Below, piece after piece: positions 3,101 to 33,636 of a stretch of 64,000 bases of DNA; within the stretch, counting starts at the first letter, position 1; every line of letters begins with the position of its first letter. The stretch comes from Ascidiella aspersa (taxonomy: Eukaryota). The stretch is taken from contig OZ004611.1 in assembly GCA_963924565.1 (NCBI GenBank), forward strand, positions 26,474,001 to 26,538,000. The letters are read 5' to 3'. The translations under genes were made by a program, and so were the position numbers. A model generated the notes under the pieces. It had not been told where the DNA came from. It saw only the letters and a program-made list of their open reading frames with translations, and did not search any database.

Positions 3101-6100
3101 AGTTGGAGTCCAACAATACTGTAAATGTGATACTGGGTGCATCAAATAACTGATTTTATACAACCGCGCTCACTAAGAAACGTTAAACATCTTTTAATAA
3201 AAACATCATTTAATTTAAGGCTTTTTCTATTAAACTAATGACATTCTCGTTACTAAACATGATGTTACGGCGGCTTTCTCAAAACAAGCGAAACAAGCTT
3301 TTAGGGTTTTAAAAGTGTCTCGTTACAATTTTACTGGGTCGCTTTGGGTGACTTAAATCCTCCGAATGTGTAAAGCCTTTTCAATAAAGTCTATTTACAA
3401 AACACACTTATCATTGAAGACTCAGCGTGCGCATGCGAATGGTGCCGGCTGGCAACGTCCAATTATTGTAATGGAAATCTTTTATTTGGTCACATGTAAA
3501 CTGCTTGTATATGATCCTCTTTTTTAGAAAGTATTATTTTGGTTTACTTTGGACGAACGTGTGCATAAACCACTCTAAATTCTGTACAAATGCACATAAA
3601 GGGCAAAATATTTCTCCACAATGCACGTAAAAGGCAAATTTTTCTCCTTTTTTATTGCTGCTCATGCTACTTTGCTTAACGTTCCGATTAGTAACATAGG
3701 TTATTGTTCATTCATATGGTTGTCGTCTGATTTTAATTTGCGAATAGAGGTAGCCTAGCGCTATTTTATGTACGTTTTGTTATTGAAGAATTTCATGACG
3801 TCAAAGTTTGCCACTTTCCAATCAAAACACTTTTGACAAGATCTGCTCTAATCATTTTTGATCTGCTCTAAACAAGATCTGCTCTAATCATTTTTAAGGA
3901 GTTCGTGTCTTTTTCGATCAGTAACATAGGCTAATGTTTTTCATATTGTTTTCATCTGATTTTGATTTACGAACAGGAAACAGCGCGCTATTTTATTTAC
4001 AGTATGTATCGTTACTAATTTATTTACGTCAATTTGTGCCACCTTTAAAAAAAAAATTTTAATTATCTTCCAATAGGTTAAAATTTCAGATACTTGACAA
4101 TTTATCCCGATATCGGAAAGTATCTCAATCTGACCTGACACTAAATTACATCATTACCTGTCTCATATAAGAAAAATAGTTTTTGTAGCTTGATAAAAAG
4201 TATATGGAAGGGTTAAGGGAAAAATAAGACTGTGTTGCTAAAATTAGAAAACGACCTCTGTTATAATAAGTTGTGCCTTTCCAGGTTCACGCCCAGTTAA
4301 AGGCCAAGACCAAGCAGAGGTTCCTTGACCTTGCCGACCTTGTGCCCCAAATGAACCCGGGCGGTTCCGGTCGGGTGATGGCGCCAGAGTTCAGGAACGT
4401 ACTTAACAAGCTCGGATTTTTTATGGACGACGTAGAATTCGAGAAACTTTGGAAGAGGTCGGTTTTAGGCTTTCAGTTTGATATTTTAACGATGACATTA
4501 TCAAAGTAATAAATGGTATAATAATTTAAAAAGTGTAAATCCTAAAAAAAATGGAAGTAAAATTTAGTTCTGGTTTGTGTGAGTCAAATAAGAGCATATT
4601 TCGTAAGGTTGAAATTTAATAGTTTAGTGAGTCATACTGGGGAAGTACACTAAAATCTAGTTGGTTGAGGGCAATAATCAAAATAAAACACCAAAATATA
4701 CAATCTCTCGTCCACTTATCTACTTCCTGCCAATGTTCAAAACGCCCCCACTATTAATAACAAATTTTAGTCGGTAATGCTCTTTAACAAATCGCTGTAT
4801 TAGGCTGTAATTACGGTGGAAATGTTGAAAATAAAATTTTGTTTTTCCAAAGACAAGCTCTCGAAAAACCGTGCATAGTTGGGACAACCTGGCATACAAA
4901 CCTTTTTGATAAATACCTTTGTTACACTGTAAACAGGATGCCACTCTTAAAAATCAATTTGTGTTTTAAGTTTACAAGCTTGTGTACAATCATGCTTAAT
5001 GAGTTCAAACTCACAATAGAATCTTTCTAAAACGTTTTACTTAAAGGCTTATTATATGGTATTTTTGTTCTATGGGGCTATTCGCTGGATTGTTCGTTTT
5101 GTTGTTTAAGAAGTGGCGATAAAATATATAAAAACGCTTTTTCCAGATACGACGAGGGTGGCCTTGGTGTTGTAAACGCTGAAAAACTGCTGAGGAAACT
5201 CGGAATCGAGTTCAGAGAATCTAGGACTCCGATGAAGAGCTTCGCTGACTCTGAAGAAATTATGCCGCGTCAAGATGTAGTTTTACCGCCATCAGCTCGT
5301 AAGTTGTTGTATTCAAGTAAAGTTAAACAACCCGGCCAATACTAACAACCCTACGATAAATTATCCCAAATACCAACTGCGTTACAATAAGAAATGGTCC
5401 CAAATAAATACACAATTTTAATAAATTCGTTTTTGTATTTCTTGCTGTATAAACGTTTTGTTTGGTCATTTGATCATTGTAGTTCGTTTGGATGGATACA
5501 GCGATTTACAGTAGCATACATTTCTAATCGATATCAGCGATTCAGTCTCCATTCGAATTCGCTGTCAATGAAACAGAGATTTCAAGTAGGCGCTTCACAA
5601 CAACAAGCAACTTGTCCTCGTTGCAGCATTTACCGGAAGATCACTGCCTAAAAATCTTGGAAAATAGGAATCTTAAAAAATTCAGAAACCAATATTTGGC
5701 TTCACAGGGTGAATTTTTAAAAACCTAACGTGCAATGCAATATAAGTAAACAAGCTCATATACAAATATGGGAATACAACTTTATGTTGAAAAATAACAA
5801 CTGAGTGATATGAAAACTTCTTCCTTTTTATACTACAATGTTTTAGGCATTAACTTCGGCCTTACGTCCTGATTAATATAAAAAATAATCTATTTCTGTA
5901 CTAATTTTGTTTTATCCTAATGCGTGTCTTATTCCAGCGTCTACTGGAAGATCACTAAAGCCGAGCGAGATGCGGCGACGCACTTCAATTGACATCGAGA
6001 AGTGGATCAAGGAAAAGTTCAGGCAGGGATTCCAGGAAATGAAGGCCGAGTTCAGGAAGGGGGATCCCCAAAACACGCGCAAGGTTTGTTCCGAACGCTC

Positions 6101-28329: not shown

Positions 28330-28335
28330 TTATCA
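28330..28335 (+). promoter_or_regulatory. TTATCA at -30 to -25 of the Pol III gene (TATA-position element)
   Basis: Same hexamer at the same distance upstream of copy 1 (28330) and copy 2 (29548), although the flanks are otherwise dissimilar. Confidence 0.45.
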
Positions 28336-28359
28336 AAGTAACTTGGACCTTGTTTGTCA

Positions 28360-28823
28360 GCTCCTTGTTGTGGCGTAGCGGAAACGCACTCTGGTTAGAA
28401 ACCGCTATGCCCGAGTTCGAACCCGGTTAAAGGTAAAATCTTTCCCCGGTAGCCGATAGAATTCTATGGGTTCGAACATGATAAAGTAACCTTAATTTCT
28501 CAATCTCTGTTAATGATAAAACTAACCATAAATAACCTCACAATGAACAAGGAGGCGCCGAATCCTGTCCCAGCCTGTGGCGGGATTCGGTTAGCCCGAT
28601 AAAATTTCTTGTATGTCACGTTAAACCCCCAATGCACACAGGTCAGAACACTGGTTAGGTAGCCGCAAGGTTTCCTAGGTCAGCTTAGTCAGGCAAGAAG
28701 TCGCTGCTTCGGGCTGGCAACAGTGTTCGAAAAACTTAGGCCCTCAGAGGGCGTGGCTCAGAGCCACACAATAGGGAACCAGCCCGAAGCAGCGCACGAG
28801 GAGTATAGGCAGCGACTTTTTTT
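28360..28823 (+). ncRNA. Unidentified ~460-nt Pol III (type 2 promoter) structured RNA gene, copy 1
   Basis: A box TGGCGTAGCGG 28371-28381, B box GAGTTCGAACC 28413-28423, T7 terminator 28817-28823, no internal T4 run, several 9-16-bp helices. Confidence 0.75.
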
Positions 28824-29577
28824 GCATAATATTTGAAAAAAAATGTTTATGTTTCTTTGGTAATTTTTCTTTTATTCATTGAAACCCCATATGCCTGATG
28901 TCATTTTTCAGCCCGATTTCTGGTACTTCGTCTATTTTGTGGTGAGATAGTGATTTATTTTCGCCTGATCGGTTAGGTTGGGTGTTACAGTGTGTTTTTA
29001 CAAGATTGGGCTCTACAGTAGCGTTACAGTCAAGATCGAAGGTTTTACTACTCGTCGATCGGTGAGAGAGATTGACTTCTACACTTACGGGCGAAGAAGT
29101 TACATTCAAGTCAGCAATTGTCAAGGTAATAATTACGGATTATTGGAAAGTTAACTTACGTTAATGTTAAGCTTATTAAGTCGAATTTACAATGAACTTC
29201 GAAGGTCGGTGAGAGAGATTGACTTTTACACTTAAGGGCGATGAAGTTCCATTCAAGTCAGCTATTGTCAATGTTCATTTCGGATTATTGGAAAGTTAAC
29301 TTACGTTAATATTAAGCTTATTAAGTTGAATTTACAATGAACTTCGAATGTATCGAAAGGTTAGGTTAATTTAACTTGTTCAACTCAAGATTTTATTTAT
29401 GATTGCTAATATTGTCATTTGAAGGTAATCGAACCGTTGACCAACGGAACATCAGGCCAGATAACTTACCACTGGACCATATTACGAGCTGCCAGAGTGA
29501 GATGAGAGTTGCCTTAGAAACAATTGTTTTCTATCGTAAAACATTTGTTATCAGGGATCTTTGCAGCAAAATTTTCA

Positions 29578-30041
29578 GCTCCTTGTTGTGGCGTAGCGGA
29601 AACGCACTCTGGTTAGAAACCGCTACGCCCGAGTTCGAACCCGGTTAAAGGTAAAATCTTTCCCCGGTAGCCGATAGATTTCTATGGGTTCGAACATGAT
29701 AAAGTAACCTTAATTTCTCAATCTCTGTTAATGATAGAATTAACCATAAATAACCTCACAATGAACAAGGAGTCGCCGAATCCTGTCCCAGCCTGTGGCG
29801 GGATTCGGTTAGCCCGGTAAAGTTTCTTGTATGTCACGTTAAAGCCCCAATGCACACAGGTCAGAACACTGGTTAGGTAGCCGCAAGGTTTCCTAGGTCA
29901 GCTTAGTCAGGCAAGAAGTCGCTGCTTCGGGCTGGCAACAGTGTTCGAAAAACTTAGGCCCTCAGAGGGCGTGGCTCAGAGCCACACAATAGGGAACCAG
30001 CCCGAAGCAGCGCACGAGGAGTATAGGCAGCGACTTTTTTT
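29578..30041 (+). ncRNA. Unidentified Pol III structured RNA gene, copy 2
   Basis: Same A/B boxes and T7 run; same length as copy 1. Confidence 0.75.
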
Positions 30042-30793
30042 GCATAATATTTGAAAAAAAATGTTTATGTTTCTTTGGTAATTTTTCTTTTATTCATTGA
30101 AACCCCATATGCCTGATGTCATTTTCAGCCCGATTTCTGGTACTTCGTCTATTTTGTGGTGAGATAGCGATTTATTTTCGCCTGATCGGTTAGGTTGGGT
30201 GTTACAGTGTGTTTTTACAAGATTGGGCTCTACAGTAGCGTTACAGTTAAGATCGAAGGTTTTACTACTCGTCGATCAGTGAGAGAGATTGACTTTTACA
30301 CTTACGGGCGAAGAAGTTACATTCAAGTCAGCTATTGTCAAGGTTAATTACGGATTATTGGAAAGTTAACTTACGTTAATGTTAAGCTTATTAAGTCGAA
30401 TTTACAATGAACTTCGAAGGTCGGTGAGAGAGATTGACTTTTGCACTTAAGGGCGATGAAGTTACATTCAAGTCAGCTATTGTCAATGTTCATTTCGGAT
30501 TATTGGAAAGTTAACTTACGTTAATGTTAAGCTTATTAAGTTGAATTTACAATGAAGTTCGAATGTATCGAAAGGTTAGGTTAATTTAACTTGTTCAACT
30601 CAAGATTTTATTTATGATTGCTAATATTGTCATTTGAAGGTAATCGAACCGTTGACCAACGGAACATCAGGCCAGATAACTTACCACTGGACCATAGTAC
30701 GAGCTGCAAGGCGGGGGTTGAGAGTTGCCTTAGAAACAATTGTTTTCTATCGTAAAACATTTGTTATCAGGGATCTTTGCAGGAAAATTTTCA

Positions 30794-31378
30794 GCTCCTT
30801 GTTGTGGCGTAGCGGAAACGCACTCTGGTTAGAAACCGCTACGCCCGAGTTCGAACCCGGTTAAAGGTAAAATCTTTCCCTGGTAGCCGATAGAATTATA
30901 TGGGTTCGAACCTGATAAAGTAACCTTAATTTCTCAATCTCTGTTAATGATAAAACTAACCATAAATAACCTCACAATGAACAAGGAGGCGCCGAATCCT
31001 GTCCCAGCCTGTGGCGGGATTCGGTTAGCCCGATAAAAATTCTTGTATGTCACGTTAAAGCCCCAATGCACACAGGTCAGAACACTGGTTAGGTAGCCGC
31101 AAGGTTTCCTAGGTCAGCTTAGTCAGGCAAGAAGTCGCTGCTTCGGGCTGGCAACAGTGTTCGAAAAACTTAGGCCCTCAGAGGGCGTGGCTCAGAGCCA
31201 CACAATAGGGAACCAGCCCGAAGCAGCGCACGAGGAGTTTTAGTCAGGCAAGAAGTCGCTGCTTCGGGCTGGCAACAGTGTTCGAAAAACTTAGGCCCTC
31301 AGAGGGCGTGGCTCAGAGCCACACAATAGGGAACCAGCCCGAAGCAGCGCACGAGGAGTATAGGCAGCGACTTTTTTT
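30794..31378 (+). ncRNA. Unidentified Pol III structured RNA gene, copy 3 (121-bp internal duplication)
   Basis: 31119-31239 is repeated from 31240; the junction creates TTTT at 31238-31241. Confidence 0.7.
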
Positions 31379-31989
31379 GCATAATATTTGAAAAAAAATG
31401 TTTATGTTTCTTTGGTAATTTTTCTTTTATTCATTGAAACCCCATATGCCTGATGTCATTTTTCAGCCCGATTTCTGGTACTTCGTCTATTTTGTTTGTG
31501 GTGAGATAGTGATTTATTTTCGCCTGATCGGTTAGGTTGGGTGTTACAGTGTGTTTTTACAAGATTGGGCTCTACAGTAGCGTTACAGTTAAGATCGAAG
31601 GTTTTACTACTCGTCGATCGCTGAGAGAGATTGACTTTTACACTTACGGGCGAAGAAGTTAGATTCAAGTCAGCTATTGTCAAGGTTCATTTCGGACTAT
31701 TGGAAAGTTAACTTACGTTAATGTTAAGCTTATTAAGTTGAATTTACAATGAACTTCGAATGTATCGAAAGGTTAGGTTAATTTAACTTGTTCAACTCAA
31801 GGTTTTATTTAGGATTGCTAATATTGTCACTCGAAGGTAATCGAACCGTTGACCAACGGAACATCAGGCCAGATAACTTACCACTGGACCATATTACGAG
31901 ATGCAAGACTGAGATGAGAGTTGCCTTAGAAACAATTGTTTTCTATCGTAAAACATTTGTTATCAGGGATCTTTGCAGGAAAATTTTCA

Positions 31990-32453
31990 GCTCCTTTGTT
32001 GTGGCGTAGCGGAAACGCACTCTGGTTAGAAACCGCTACGCCCGAGTTCGAACCCGGTTAAAGGTAAAATCTTTCCCTGGTAGCCGATAGAATTATATGG
32101 GTTCGAACCTGATAAAGTAACCTTAATTTCTCAATCTCTGTTAATGATAAAACTAACCATAAATAACCTCACAATGAACAAGGAGTCGCCGAATCCTGTC
32201 CCAGCCTGTGGCGGGATTCGGTTAGCCCGATAAAAATACTTGTATGTCACGTTAAACCCCCAATGCACACAGGTCAGAACACTGATTAGGTAGCCGCAAG
32301 GTTTCCTAGGTCAGCTTAGTCAGGCAAGAAGTCGCTGCTTCGGGCTGGCAACAGTGTTCGAAAAACTTAGGCCCTCAGAGGGCGTGGCTCAGAGCCACAC
32401 AATAGGGACCAGCCCGAAGCAGCGCACGAGGAGTATAGGCAGCTACTTTTTTT
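31990..32453 (+). ncRNA. Unidentified Pol III structured RNA gene, copy 4
   Basis: Same boxes and terminator; one insertion, one deletion, and GCAGCGAC changed to GCAGCTAC near the 3' end. Confidence 0.72.
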
Positions 32454-33230
32454 GCATAATGTTTAAAAAAAATTTTACGCTTCTTGCTTTATTTTTCTTT
32501 TATTAACTGAAAACCCTACTGCCCGATGTTTGTATTTTTCAGACGGTTTTAGGTTTGTTTTTTTTTATTTTGTGGTGAGATAGCAATTTATTTTCGTCTG
32601 AAGGGTTAGGCGTTACAGTGTGTTGCCACAAGAATAGGGGTTCCATATTAACTTACAGTTATGATCGAAGGTTTTACACTTGTCGATCGGTGAGAGAGAT
32701 TAAGTTTTACAGTTTGGGGCGATGAAGCTACGTTCAAGCCAGCTAGTGCCAATTAAGGTTATTATATATCGGATTACTGGAAAGTTAGGGTTCGTTAATG
32801 TGAAGATAATAGAGATGAATTTACAGCGAACTTAGAAGGTTTAATACGTATCTTACGATACTCTGGAAGTTATATTTAGAATGGATTATTAGTTATATTT
32901 AGAATGGAATGGCAATTGAAGGTAATCGAACCATAGACCAATGGAACATCAAGCCAGATAACTTACCACTCGGCCATATTACAAGATGCGATAGGGAAAG
33001 GAGAGTTGCATTAGAAAGAGTTGGCAATCGTTTAAGCAACAATCAATGATGGAACACTTGCGCACTGATACTGCGTACGATAAGAGCAGAACATGTCTAT
33101 AAAATCATTTGACTACAACAATTCTTGACGATTATTAATTCAAACGTTCGACATCCGGAATATTTACACATCTTAGAACATCTATCGCAGCTGGAAAAAA
33201 AGTTGACCCCTTTTCATATATTTTCTTTTA

Positions 33231-33636
33231 TTGATTAAAATGCGTTGGCGTTTTTTATTGTGTGTTCTCGTTTATTTATTTGTATTTTTGGTTAGAAGGT
33301 TTGTGATGCAGTTATACGTTGGTCCGTTTATATCCGGAGAACATTCAGGTTGGGTTTTTAGCATCGCAGTTAAGACCTTACTAATAGAATCTTTAGGGCG
33401 GGGCAACTTGGCTAATAGCTAAGGTGGATTAAATTACAGATGAGCTACTTACTTTTAAGGTCACATGATAATTCCTTGAGCTTCAAAGGTTTAATACGCC
33501 TCGAACGGTTAAGTTCACAAGTGCTACTGTAACTACATTTAGGGTACAATATGTCGGCAGTTGGTAGTTTAAGAACCGTAGACCAATGGAACATCAGAAT
33601 GAACAACCTTCCATTAGACCACATCACAAGATGGTA
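33231..33636 (+). pseudogene. Decayed coding remnant, homologous to the tandem-array spacer
   Basis: RTVDQWNIRMNNLPLDHITRW* (about 33572-33636) aligns with RTIDQWNIKPDNLPLGHITRC (about 32928) and RTVDQRNIRPDNLPLDHITSC (about 29430), mostly through synonymous changes; upstream frame is broken by stops. Confidence 0.5.

What the first reader, a model, noticed from the sequence alone, without database searches (positions are those of the whole stretch)
28360..32453. Four tandem copies of an unrecognised ~460-nt Pol III RNA gene with a refolded tRNA-type head
Seen (copy 1): A box at +12, B box at +54, T7 terminator, and no internal T4 in a genome full of T runs. The tRNA-like head does not form a good cloverleaf. 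Instead the A box is paired (GGCGTAGCGG 28372 / CCGCTAYGCC 28402) and so is the B box (GTTCGAACCC 28415 / GGGTTCGAAC 28468). The 5' end closes a ~195-nt domain (CTCCTTGTT 28361 / AACAAGGAG 28546), followed by a 13-bp hairpin (28557-28591) and a complex 3' domain. Two copy differences swap G-C for G-U and keep the pairing (28407 T/C; CGG vs TGG in the CGGTAGCCG hairpin). Established: internal A/B boxes plus oligo-T define Pol III type 2 genes (tRNA, vault, VA, BC1, SINEs). It lacks the hallmarks I know for 7SL, 7SK, RNase P/MRP, vault and telomerase RNA, and has no A-tail or TSD. Inference: a lineage-specific functional RNA or a SINE master gene.
Basis: partly seen in the sequence, partly recalled or inferred. 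Interest (0 to 1): 0.85.

Follow-up and report, generated by a model that had tools for sequence, protein, structure and literature searches.

The report
Orphan 460-nt Pol III-type RNA genes
A sea-squirt-like genome carries about two dozen nearly identical copies of a ~460-base gene that has every sequence hallmark of an RNA polymerase III non-coding RNA gene, matches no known RNA family, and is kept about five times better than the DNA around it; I could not check whether the RNA is actually made.

Summary
There are four tandem units with a period of about 1,218 bp. Each holds a ~464-nt body with an A box at +12, a B box at +53, a T7 run and a strongly stable fold (z -3.9).

Rfam and ARAGORN recognise nothing. 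The 308-Mb genome has 23 full-length and about 8 partial copies. They sit in at least three different flank contexts, and none has the features of a retroposed copy, so this is not a SINE.

The body differs by about 3.5% between copies whose flanks or spacers differ by about 17-20%. A TTATC motif at -30 is kept in all ten upstream contexts compared. The five most diverged copies are the ones with a damaged terminator or an internal T4. The last ~170 nt are almost invariant.

Best reading (0.5): a lineage-specific, multi-copy Pol III non-coding RNA gene with a tRNA-derived promoter head, comparable to rodent 4.5SH/4.5SI.

Limits:
- No RNA evidence.
- No other species could be searched.
- The copies are too alike to test covariation; the apparent excess of structure-keeping changes vanished in a non-circular test.
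- Gene conversion cannot be told from selection.
- The lack of an internal T4 is explained by base composition.

The scan had already noted this same stretch (s1-802478, s1-802069).

The parts
28330..28335 (+). TTATCA, a TATA-like box at -30..-25 of copy 1. The same TTATC sits at -30 of copies 2-4 (29548, 30764, 31960) although their upstream DNA is unrelated to that of copy 1.
   Evidence: Upstream 60 nt of ten contexts anchored at +1: TTAT at -30..-27 in 9 of 10 (sequences).
28360..28823 (+). Copy 1 of the ~464-nt predicted Pol III transcript. A box 28371-28381, B box 28412-28423, second B-box-like palindrome 28468-28478, T7 terminator 28817-28823.
28636..28816 (+). 3' domain of copy 1, the best-kept part. 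A GCAA-loop hairpin, then a junction closed by a long helix of about 18 bp that holds a short hairpin and two hairpins with CAG loops (CUCAGAG motif). The 3' end lies in a terminal helix ahead of the U tail.
   Evidence: Fold z -4.2. Only 7 of 80 variant events among 18 intact copies fall in the last 168 columns. Model R1 finds it only at these loci.
28836..29497 (-). Convergent spacer unit on the minus strand. It has a second tRNA-like head ('head B', reverse complement of about 29420-29490, A box TGGTCCAGTGG, B box GGTTCGATTACC), a body with two 145-bp subrepeats (29059-29348), and T8 on the minus strand at 28836-28843, which is 12 nt from the plus-strand T7.
   Evidence: Head B is about 92% alike between the two arrays while the rest of the spacer is ~78-83%.
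29578..30041 (+). Copy 2, intact, T7 at 30035-30041.
   Evidence: 98% identical to copy 1.
30794..31378 (+). Copy 3, with a perfect 121-bp internal duplication (31119-31359). The junction makes TTTT at 31238-31241, so a premature stop about 20 nt before the normal end is likely.
31990..32453 (+). Copy 4, intact, T7 at 32447-32453. One extra T near the 5' end (CTCCTTTGTT).
32460..33040 (-). Last, more diverged spacer unit (head B at 32911-32988) with no RNA gene after it. A further decayed head B lies at 33556-33633.
   Evidence: spacer of unit 4 is 83% identical to that of unit 1, while the RNA bodies are 98% identical.

Best explanation
The ~464-nt unit is a gene for a lineage-specific structured non-coding RNA made by RNA polymerase III. 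It is present in about 18-19 apparently intact copies plus several decayed ones.

Proposed mechanism (inferred from sequence, not shown):
1. TFIIIC binds the A and B boxes that survive in a tRNA-derived 5' head.
2. A TATA-like TTATC at -30 helps place TFIIIB.
3. Transcription starts at about 28359-28360 and stops in the T7 run.
4. In the RNA the head does not form a cloverleaf. The A-box and B-box sequences are each locked into a perfect 10-bp helix, so the RNA should escape tRNA-type end processing and stay full length.
5. The almost invariant 3' 170 nt would be the working part, most likely a protein-binding scaffold. This part comprises a junction closed by a long helix, twin CUCAGAG hairpins and a terminal helix next to the U tail.

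The gene was spread by DNA duplication, in tandem and in large blocks, not by retroposition. The cellular role is unknown.
For: Promoter and terminator:
- A box, B box and T7 are at canonical positions.
- TTAT at -30 is present in 9 of 10 upstream contexts. These include contexts that share no other similarity, such as copy 1 against copies 2-4.
- 18 of 23 full-length copies have a T4-free body ending in T7-T8. The five copies with a broken or shortened run or an internal T4 are the most diverged, at 90-94%.

Conservation against neighbouring DNA:
- Tandem units: RNA 95-100% identical where spacers are 79-87%, for example unit 1 against unit 4 at 98.1% and 83.1%.
- Eleven copies inside >=10-kb repeated blocks: body distance 0.035 against flank distance 0.195 (profile).
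- Every copy of those blocks holds the gene, so it was not inserted later.

Within the body:
- Variation is uneven (chi-square p 2e-4). The 3' 170 nt are almost invariant.

Fold stability:
- z is -3.9, -3.8 and -4.2 for the whole RNA, the 5' half and the 3' domain.

No alternative identity:
- No Rfam family and no tRNA call.
- No protein domain in the ten ORFs scanned (of the fourteen of 110 aa or more in the window), and no ORF of 90 aa or more in one paralogous 10-kb locus.
Against:
- No other species could be searched, so conservation is known only among paralogues.
- Covariation is uninformative: one compensatory pair out of 126.
- The excess of pair-keeping changes on the RNAalifold structure (27 of 62, p 1e-4) is circular. 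It disappears on a structure predicted from the consensus alone.
- Body distances do not track flank distances (Mantel r 0.36, p 0.12; C5 copies only r 0.03). Gene conversion could therefore produce the flank/body contrast without selection on an RNA.
- The T4-free body follows from its base composition.
- SINEBase warns that A and B boxes are an indication of Pol III transcription, not proof (PMC3531059).
Confidence: 0.5

Rival explanations
1. It is a repeated DNA segment kept uniform by gene conversion or concerted evolution, with no function for the organism. It could be an old tRNA-derived element that is the central cargo of a palindromic, foldback-like repeat. It may or may not be transcribed.
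For: - The body tree is not congruent with the flank tree.
- Variants form mosaics across context groups.
- In the >=10-kb blocks the gene sits between inverted arrays of 123-129-bp subrepeats and an outer 81-85-nt inverted repeat made of a second tRNA-like head.
- There is no covariation support.
- Even copies with broken terminators are still 94% identical.
Against: - The well-kept tract ends sharply at the terminator and near the start site in every context.
- An isolated -30 TTATC is kept in otherwise unrelated upstream DNA.
- The five most diverged copies carry a terminator defect or an internal T4.
- Variation inside the body is strongly uneven.
Conversion alone explains none of these easily. 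Concerted evolution is also normal for real multi-copy RNA genes.
Confidence: 0.27
2. It is a precursor rather than a final product. The tRNA-like head serves as a promoter leader and is cut off, as in yeast RPR1 and SNR52. Alternatively, the hairpins are processed into small RNAs, as in the tRNA-miRNA units of murine gammaherpesvirus 68.
For: - The head-plus-body layout fits, and the 3' part is far better kept than the 5' 290 nt.
- There is a 13-bp hairpin right after the 195-nt head domain.
- The comparison cases are recalled from established literature, not tested here.
Against: - The head is predicted to refold so that acceptor-like and T-arm-like shapes are absent. The Rfam tRNA model gives only 16 bits.
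- The hairpins are short for Dicer or Drosha substrates.
- No read data are available.
Confidence: 0.12
3. It is a SINE family, or its master gene, spread by retroposition.
For: It has a tRNA-derived head with A and B boxes followed by a body of unknown origin, and its length is under 700 bp.
Against: - There are about 31 loci in 308 Mb. All are in tandem arrays or were copied together with 50 nt to over 10 kb of flank.
- There is no target-site duplication and no A-rich or simple-repeat tail. The T7 terminator and downstream bases are part of the conserved unit.
- The 3' domain was found nowhere else, so no LINE partner shows up. Only 150 of about 52,900 first-look candidates were scored.
- It fails SINEBase criteria (i) and (ii).
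Confidence: 0.03
4. It acts as DNA. It would be a cluster of TFIIIC/Pol III binding sites serving as a chromatin boundary or similar element, and the RNA would be irrelevant.
For: - Each unit holds two B-box matches (28412-28423, 28468-28478).
- It is flanked by further conserved tRNA-like heads.
Against: - Conservation covers the whole 464 nt and is strongest in the 3' 170 nt, which hold no box.
- The terminator is kept in the best-conserved copies.
Confidence: 0.06

Closest known systems
Rodent 4.5SH and 4.5SI RNA genes
   Same: - Lineage-specific Pol III genes derived from a SINE or tRNA-type ancestor.
- Internal A and B boxes plus a needed TATA-like box at -31/-24.
- 4.5SH genes sit one per unit in long tandem repeats (PMC7279448).
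- Here there are A and B boxes, TTATC at -30, tandem 1.2-kb units and further dispersed gene copies.
   Different: - Those RNAs are under 100 nt and this one is ~464 nt.
- 4.5SH has hundreds of copies in 4-5-kb units; here there are about 25 copies in 1.2-kb units and in >=10-kb blocks.
- There is no sequence similarity.
- Their expression and nuclear location are shown; nothing is shown here.
tRNA-derived SINEs (SINEBase definition)
   Same: tRNA-related head with a Pol III promoter, a body of unknown origin, and length under 700 bp.
   Different: - Fewer than 100 copies.
- Tandem, or duplicated with flanks, rather than interspersed by retroposition.
- No tail, no target-site duplication and no LINE-like 3' end.
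Yeast RPR1 and SNR52 (leader-type Pol III promoters) and the 522-nt yeast scR1
   Same: From my own knowledge of the literature: these are long Pol III transcripts whose A and B boxes lie in a 5' tRNA-like leader or inside the RNA. They show that a type 2 promoter can drive RNAs of 400-500 nt.
   Different: - Those RNAs belong to universal families (RNase P RNA, a box C/D snoRNA, SRP RNA) and are single-copy.
- This RNA matches none of those Rfam families and is multi-copy.
- Leader removal is untested here.
   Same: From my own knowledge: small RNAs with type 2 promoters. BC1, BC200 and snaR are restricted to one clade and were recruited from tRNA or SINE sequence. snaR and vault RNA genes occur in small clusters.
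   Different: - All are 90-200 nt.
- None has a large multi-helix 3' domain.
- There is no sequence or Rfam match here.

Membership tests
Type 2 RNA polymerase III gene | A box about 10-20 nt after the start and B box 30-60 nt further on | tested here: met
   TGGCGTAGCGG at +12..+22 and GAGTTCGAACCC at +53..+64. Each is one mismatch from the consensus. The B box is invariant in all 23 copies; the A box has single substitutions in two.
Type 2 RNA polymerase III gene | Run of four or more T as terminator, with none inside the transcript | tested here: met
   T7-T8 after a T4-free body in 18 of 23 copies. It is damaged in the five most diverged copies. The absence of an internal T4 is not significant given the base composition (24% of shuffles).
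Type 2 RNA polymerase III gene | Actual transcription by Pol III | not testable with these tools
No ChIP or RNA data could be reached.
4.5SH/4.5SI-like lineage-specific Pol III ncRNA gene | TATA-like box near -31/-24 in addition to the A and B boxes (PMC7279448) | tested here: met
   TTATC at -30..-26 in 9 of 10 upstream contexts.
4.5SH/4.5SI-like lineage-specific Pol III ncRNA gene | RNA body kept while the rest of the repeat unit drifts | tested here: met
   RNA 95-100% against spacer 79-87%. Body distance 0.035 against flank distance 0.195.
SINE (SINEBase, PMC3531059) | Interspersed, non-tandem repeat | tested here: not met
   Copies are in two tandem arrays, in mini-clusters, and inside >=10-kb duplicated blocks with shared flanks.
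SINE (SINEBase, PMC3531059) | [quoted passage not shown] | tested here: not met
   35 BLAST matches, equal to 23 full-length plus about 8 partial loci. The covariance model finds the same loci only.
SINE (SINEBase, PMC3531059) | At least 60% identity to a tRNA over 60 nt or more | tested here: inconclusive
   The Rfam tRNA model aligns over all 71 positions but scores 16 bits, against a threshold of 29. ARAGORN finds nothing. No comparison with this genome's own tRNA genes was made.
SINE | Simple-repeat or A-rich tail, target-site duplications, and a LINE-related 3' end in stringent SINEs | tested here: not met
   Units end in T7 followed by conserved flank. No direct repeats bracket them. The 3' domain is absent elsewhere in the genome.
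tRNA gene | Cloverleaf recognised by tRNA finders | tested here: not met
   ARAGORN finds 0 genes. The Rfam tRNA score is below threshold. The minimum-free-energy and centroid folds pair the A-box and B-box sequences in two 10-bp helices instead.
Known Pol III RNA families (7SL, 7SK, RNase P/MRP, vault, Y, U6) and any other Rfam family | Match to the family covariance model | tested here: not met
   There are no matches at gathering score in the 64-kb window. At E up to 10, only the weak tRNA hit and three chance hits appear.
Structured functional RNA | Compensatory base changes supporting the helices | tested here: inconclusive
   One compensatory pair out of 126, and mean column identity of 96%. 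A non-circular test shows no excess of pair-keeping changes.

The most novel reading that the evidence does not exclude
This is a previously undescribed, abundant ~460-nt Pol III RNA of an ascidian lineage that forms its own ribonucleoprotein particle. It is encoded at the centre of a conserved three-unit Pol III locus. In that locus the RNA gene always travels with one or two copies of a second tRNA-like-headed unit that converge on a shared back-to-back terminator. That arrangement may couple their expression or fence off the locus.
Probability: 0.3. Interest if true: 0.7.

Novelty: new variant of a known kind. Interest (0 to 1): 0.5.

Why it matters
Clade-restricted Pol III RNAs such as 4.5SH, BC1/BC200 and snaR have turned out to have real jobs. 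All known examples are short, and most are from mammals.

A 460-nt, multi-copy, well-kept Pol III-type gene in a tunicate would be an unusually large example from the sister group of vertebrates. It would also be a ready candidate for a new RNP.

The locus is easy to test. One probe or a few total-RNA reads would settle whether the RNA exists. The sharp contrast between the gene and its spacer gives built-in controls.

If no RNA is made, the locus is still a clear case of very local sequence homogenisation inside diverging repeats.

Tried and rejected
- **Known RNA families:** Rfam at gathering score on the window and on seven paralogous loci, and at E up to 10 on one unit. Only a sub-threshold tRNA hit appeared, plus an unrelated U4 gene near the C8 copies. 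ARAGORN found nothing in the window or in 17 loci.
- **Read evidence:** I stopped there, so read laying was never used.
- **Other organisms:** one metagenome scan with the paired B-box pattern gave 13 contigs. All were chance matches to the GTTCGAAC palindrome. No eukaryote genome collection is available.
- **Transcriptome contigs through the protein collection:** the longest open frame of the 3' domain (57 aa) found nothing.
- **T4-free body as evidence:** rejected, because 24% of shuffles are also T4-free.
- **Structure-keeping substitutions:** they looked significant on the RNAalifold structure. The test is circular, and on a consensus-only structure there is no excess.
- **Site-specific insertion into a repeated target:** rejected, because both flank probes hit only loci that hold the gene.
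- **Shared 3' tail with a LINE, or more distant family members:** covariance model R1 of the 3' domain found only the known loci. Only 150 of about 52,900 first-look candidates were scored.
- **Selection against gene conversion:** the Mantel test of body against flank distances was not significant once an alignment artefact (row L037_1) was removed, so this stays open.
- **Inverted repeats around the window's array:** none found.
- **Protein domains in nearby ORFs:** none found.
- **Telomerase template and 7SK GAUC motifs:** I looked for these by eye in the sequence and found neither.
Full report
**What is there**

Window 28354-33040 is a tandem array with a period of 1216-1218 bp. It holds four copies of a ~464-nt unit on the plus strand:
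- copy 1: 28360-28823
- copy 2: 29578-30041
- copy 3: 30794-31378
- copy 4: 31990-32453

In copy 1 the A box TGGCGTAGCGG is at +12, the B box GAGTTCGAACCC is at +53, and a T7 run is at 28817-28823. No T4 occurs from 28332 to 28816.

ViennaRNA's folds of the 5' half alone and RNAalifold reproduce them. In the whole-RNA fold of copy 1 the 5' end pairs near the 3' end instead. In every fold the A-box and B-box sequences each sit in a perfect 10-bp helix rather than in a cloverleaf.

The folds are far more stable than dinucleotide shuffles: z is -3.9 for the whole RNA, -3.8 for the 5' half and -4.2 for the 3' domain.

There are two small corrections. The T/C site is 28408, not 28407. Copy 3 carries a perfect 121-bp internal duplication whose junction makes a TTTT at 31238-31241.

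**What it is not**

- Rfam 15 has no match at gathering score anywhere in the window. With permissive settings, one unit gives only a 16-bit tRNA alignment (threshold 29) and chance hits. ARAGORN calls no tRNA.
- The ten ORFs I scanned, of the fourteen of 110 aa or more in the window, have no Pfam domain. A paralogous 10-kb locus has no ORF of 90 aa or more.

**Copies in the genome**

The window's genome is 308 Mb in 75 contigs. Earlier notes of this scan take it for an ascidian, which I did not test. It holds 35 BLAST matches, which reduce to 23 full-length and about 8 partial loci. Most lie on contig C5 between 20.7 and 29.1 Mb. Others are on C3, C4 and C8, with a fragment on C6. A covariance model of the 3' domain (R1) finds the same loci and nothing else.

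The copies lie in at least three kinds of surroundings:
- **1.2-kb tandem arrays.** This is the window's own array and a second one at C5:29.09 Mb.
- **Repeated blocks of at least 10 kb.** There are about twelve on C5 and two on C8. They are collinear over the full 10 kb fetched, at 68-88% identity.
- **A third group.** This is C3, C4 and a pair at C5:24.90 Mb, which share only about 30-70 nt of upstream sequence.

Probes from the flanks of the large blocks hit only places that also hold the gene. There are therefore no empty blocks, and the gene was not inserted into them later.

Nothing looks like retroposition. There are no target-site duplications and no A-rich or simple-repeat tail. The T run and about 20 nt after it belong to the conserved unit. 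Measured against the SINEBase definition (PMC3531059), the element fails on copy number and on being interspersed. The SINE master-gene reading is therefore set aside.

**Evidence that the unit is maintained**

- **Body against spacer in the arrays.** Within and between the two arrays the RNA bodies are 95-100% identical, while the spacers of the same unit pairs are 79-87%. Unit 1 against unit 4 of the window gives 98.1% and 83.1%.
- **Body against flank in the large blocks.** For eleven copies the mean pairwise distance is 0.035 in the body and 0.195 in the flanks (profile along the locus). The drop in identity is sharp at the terminator and lies within about 20-60 nt upstream of the start.
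- **A kept promoter motif.** When the upstream 60 nt of ten contexts are anchored at +1, TTAT at -30..-27 is present in nine of them. These include contexts with no other similarity, such as the left flank of the array against the spacers. TCA at -3..-1 is also kept. A TATA-like box at -31/-24 is what the rodent 4.5SH and 4.5SI genes need in addition to their A and B boxes (PMC7279448).
- **Terminator defects go with divergence.** The 18 copies with a T4-free body and a T7-T8 run are the mutually most similar. The five copies with a shortened or interrupted run or an internal T4 are the most diverged, at 90-94%. These are C3, C4, the two on C8, and C5:21407903.
- **Uneven variation within the body.** Among the 18 intact copies, 73 of 80 variant events lie in the first 294 columns and only 7 in the last 168 (chi-square p 2e-4). 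The 3' domain is nearly frozen. It contains a GCAA hairpin, a junction closed by a long helix of about 18 bp, two hairpins with the same CUCAGAG motif, and a terminal helix next to the U tail.

**What could not be shown**

- **No RNA evidence.** I did not try further, so no reads were laid.
- **No cross-species data.** No eukaryote genomes other than this one can be searched here. A metagenome scan gave only chance matches. A peptide search meant to catch transcriptome contigs found nothing.
- **Covariation is uninformative.** The paralogues are 96% alike on average, and only one pair out of 126 shows a compensatory change. On the RNAalifold structure, pair-keeping changes seemed enriched (27 of 62 against 22% expected). 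That structure was chosen using the same variation. With a structure predicted from the consensus alone the excess is gone (25 of 76 against 30%, p 0.33).
- **The T4-free body is expected.** The body has 50% G+C and 22% T, and 24% of its shuffles are also T4-free.
- **Selection against gene conversion is open.** Body distances do not follow flank distances (Mantel r 0.36, p 0.12; C5 only r 0.03, after removing an alignment artefact seen). Gene conversion could therefore account for the uniform bodies. This does not argue against a gene, because real multi-copy RNA genes evolve in concert. It does mean the flank/body contrast alone does not prove selection on an RNA.

**The locus has a partner unit**

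Each spacer of the array reads, on the minus strand, as a second unit. It has a different tRNA-like head ('head B': A box TGGTCCAGTGG, B box GGTTCGATTACC, reverse complement of about 29420-29490) and a body with 145-bp subrepeats. Its T8 lies only 12 nt from the plus-strand T7.

Head B is about 92% conserved between the two arrays, while the rest of the spacer is about 78-83%.

In the large blocks the same head occurs twice. One copy is on the plus strand about 270-360 nt upstream of the RNA gene. The other is on the minus strand about 930-1200 nt downstream. Together they form the 81-85-nt outer inverted repeat, with inverted arrays of 123-129-bp subrepeats inside it.

All 27 genomic matches to head B are at RNA-gene loci. 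The RNA gene is thus the centre of a conserved, partly palindromic arrangement of Pol III-like units. I cannot say whether that reflects function, such as convergent termination or a boundary, or the history of a foldback-like repeat.

**Verdict**

The most likely reading (about 0.5) is a lineage-specific, multi-copy Pol III non-coding RNA gene. Its tRNA-derived head supplies the promoter and then refolds in the RNA, and its 3' domain is the working part.

It works like the rodent 4.5SH/4.5SI genes: type 2 promoter plus TATA-like box, tandem units, and gene kept while the spacer drifts. It is about five times longer and unrelated in sequence.

The main rival (about 0.27) is homogenised repeat DNA with no role for the organism. 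A processed-precursor version (about 0.12), a DNA-level role (about 0.06) and a true SINE (about 0.03) follow.

One northern blot or a set of total-RNA reads would decide the central point.

Noticed in passing
window 29420-29490, 30635-30705, 31832-31902, 32911-32988, 33556-33633 (minus strand); L031 about 4630-4710 (+) and 5980-6050 (-): A second tRNA-like head (A box TGGYCYARTGG, B box GGTTCGATTMCC) always accompanies the RNA gene. It heads a minus-strand unit in each tandem spacer. In the large repeated blocks it forms the outer inverted repeat on both sides of the gene. All 27 genomic matches lie at RNA-gene loci, and it is better kept than the rest of the spacer.
   Followed up: partly
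window 28817-28843: Back-to-back terminators: T7 for the plus strand, 12 nt, then A8 (T8 on the minus strand). The T-run / GCAT(A/T)... / A-rich layout is largely kept after the gene in every context, including those without the tandem spacer.
   Followed up: partly
window 31119-31359: There is a perfect 121-bp internal duplication in copy 3 of the RNA gene. Its junction creates TTTT at 31238-31241, a likely premature Pol III stop.
   Followed up: yes
L038:3639-3775 (G000:C8, between the two C8 copies): A U4 spliceosomal snRNA gene (Rfam RF00015, 53 bits, threshold 46) lies between the two decayed copies on contig C8.
   Followed up: no
L026 (G000:C5:24181234-24181547 and 24182063-24182405, minus strand): Two copies are cut off after position 313 and continue into unrelated DNA that soon contains another head-B-like tRNA-like sequence. 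One of them also has a 30-nt internal duplication of the B-box region. These are pseudogenes in a mini-cluster next to an intact copy.
   Followed up: partly
L031:8874-9008: A ~139-bp element matches at 81-87% on nearly all large contigs, with 593 first-look candidates. It is probably an abundant MITE or SINE unrelated to this finding.
   Followed up: no
G000:C5:20.7-25.8 Mb and C8:7.35 Mb: Blocks of at least 10 kb of non-coding DNA, collinear at 68-88% identity, recur about twelve times over 5 Mb of contig C5 and twice on C8. Each has the RNA gene inside. Their full size and nature (segmental duplication or very large repeat) were not worked out.
   Followed up: partly
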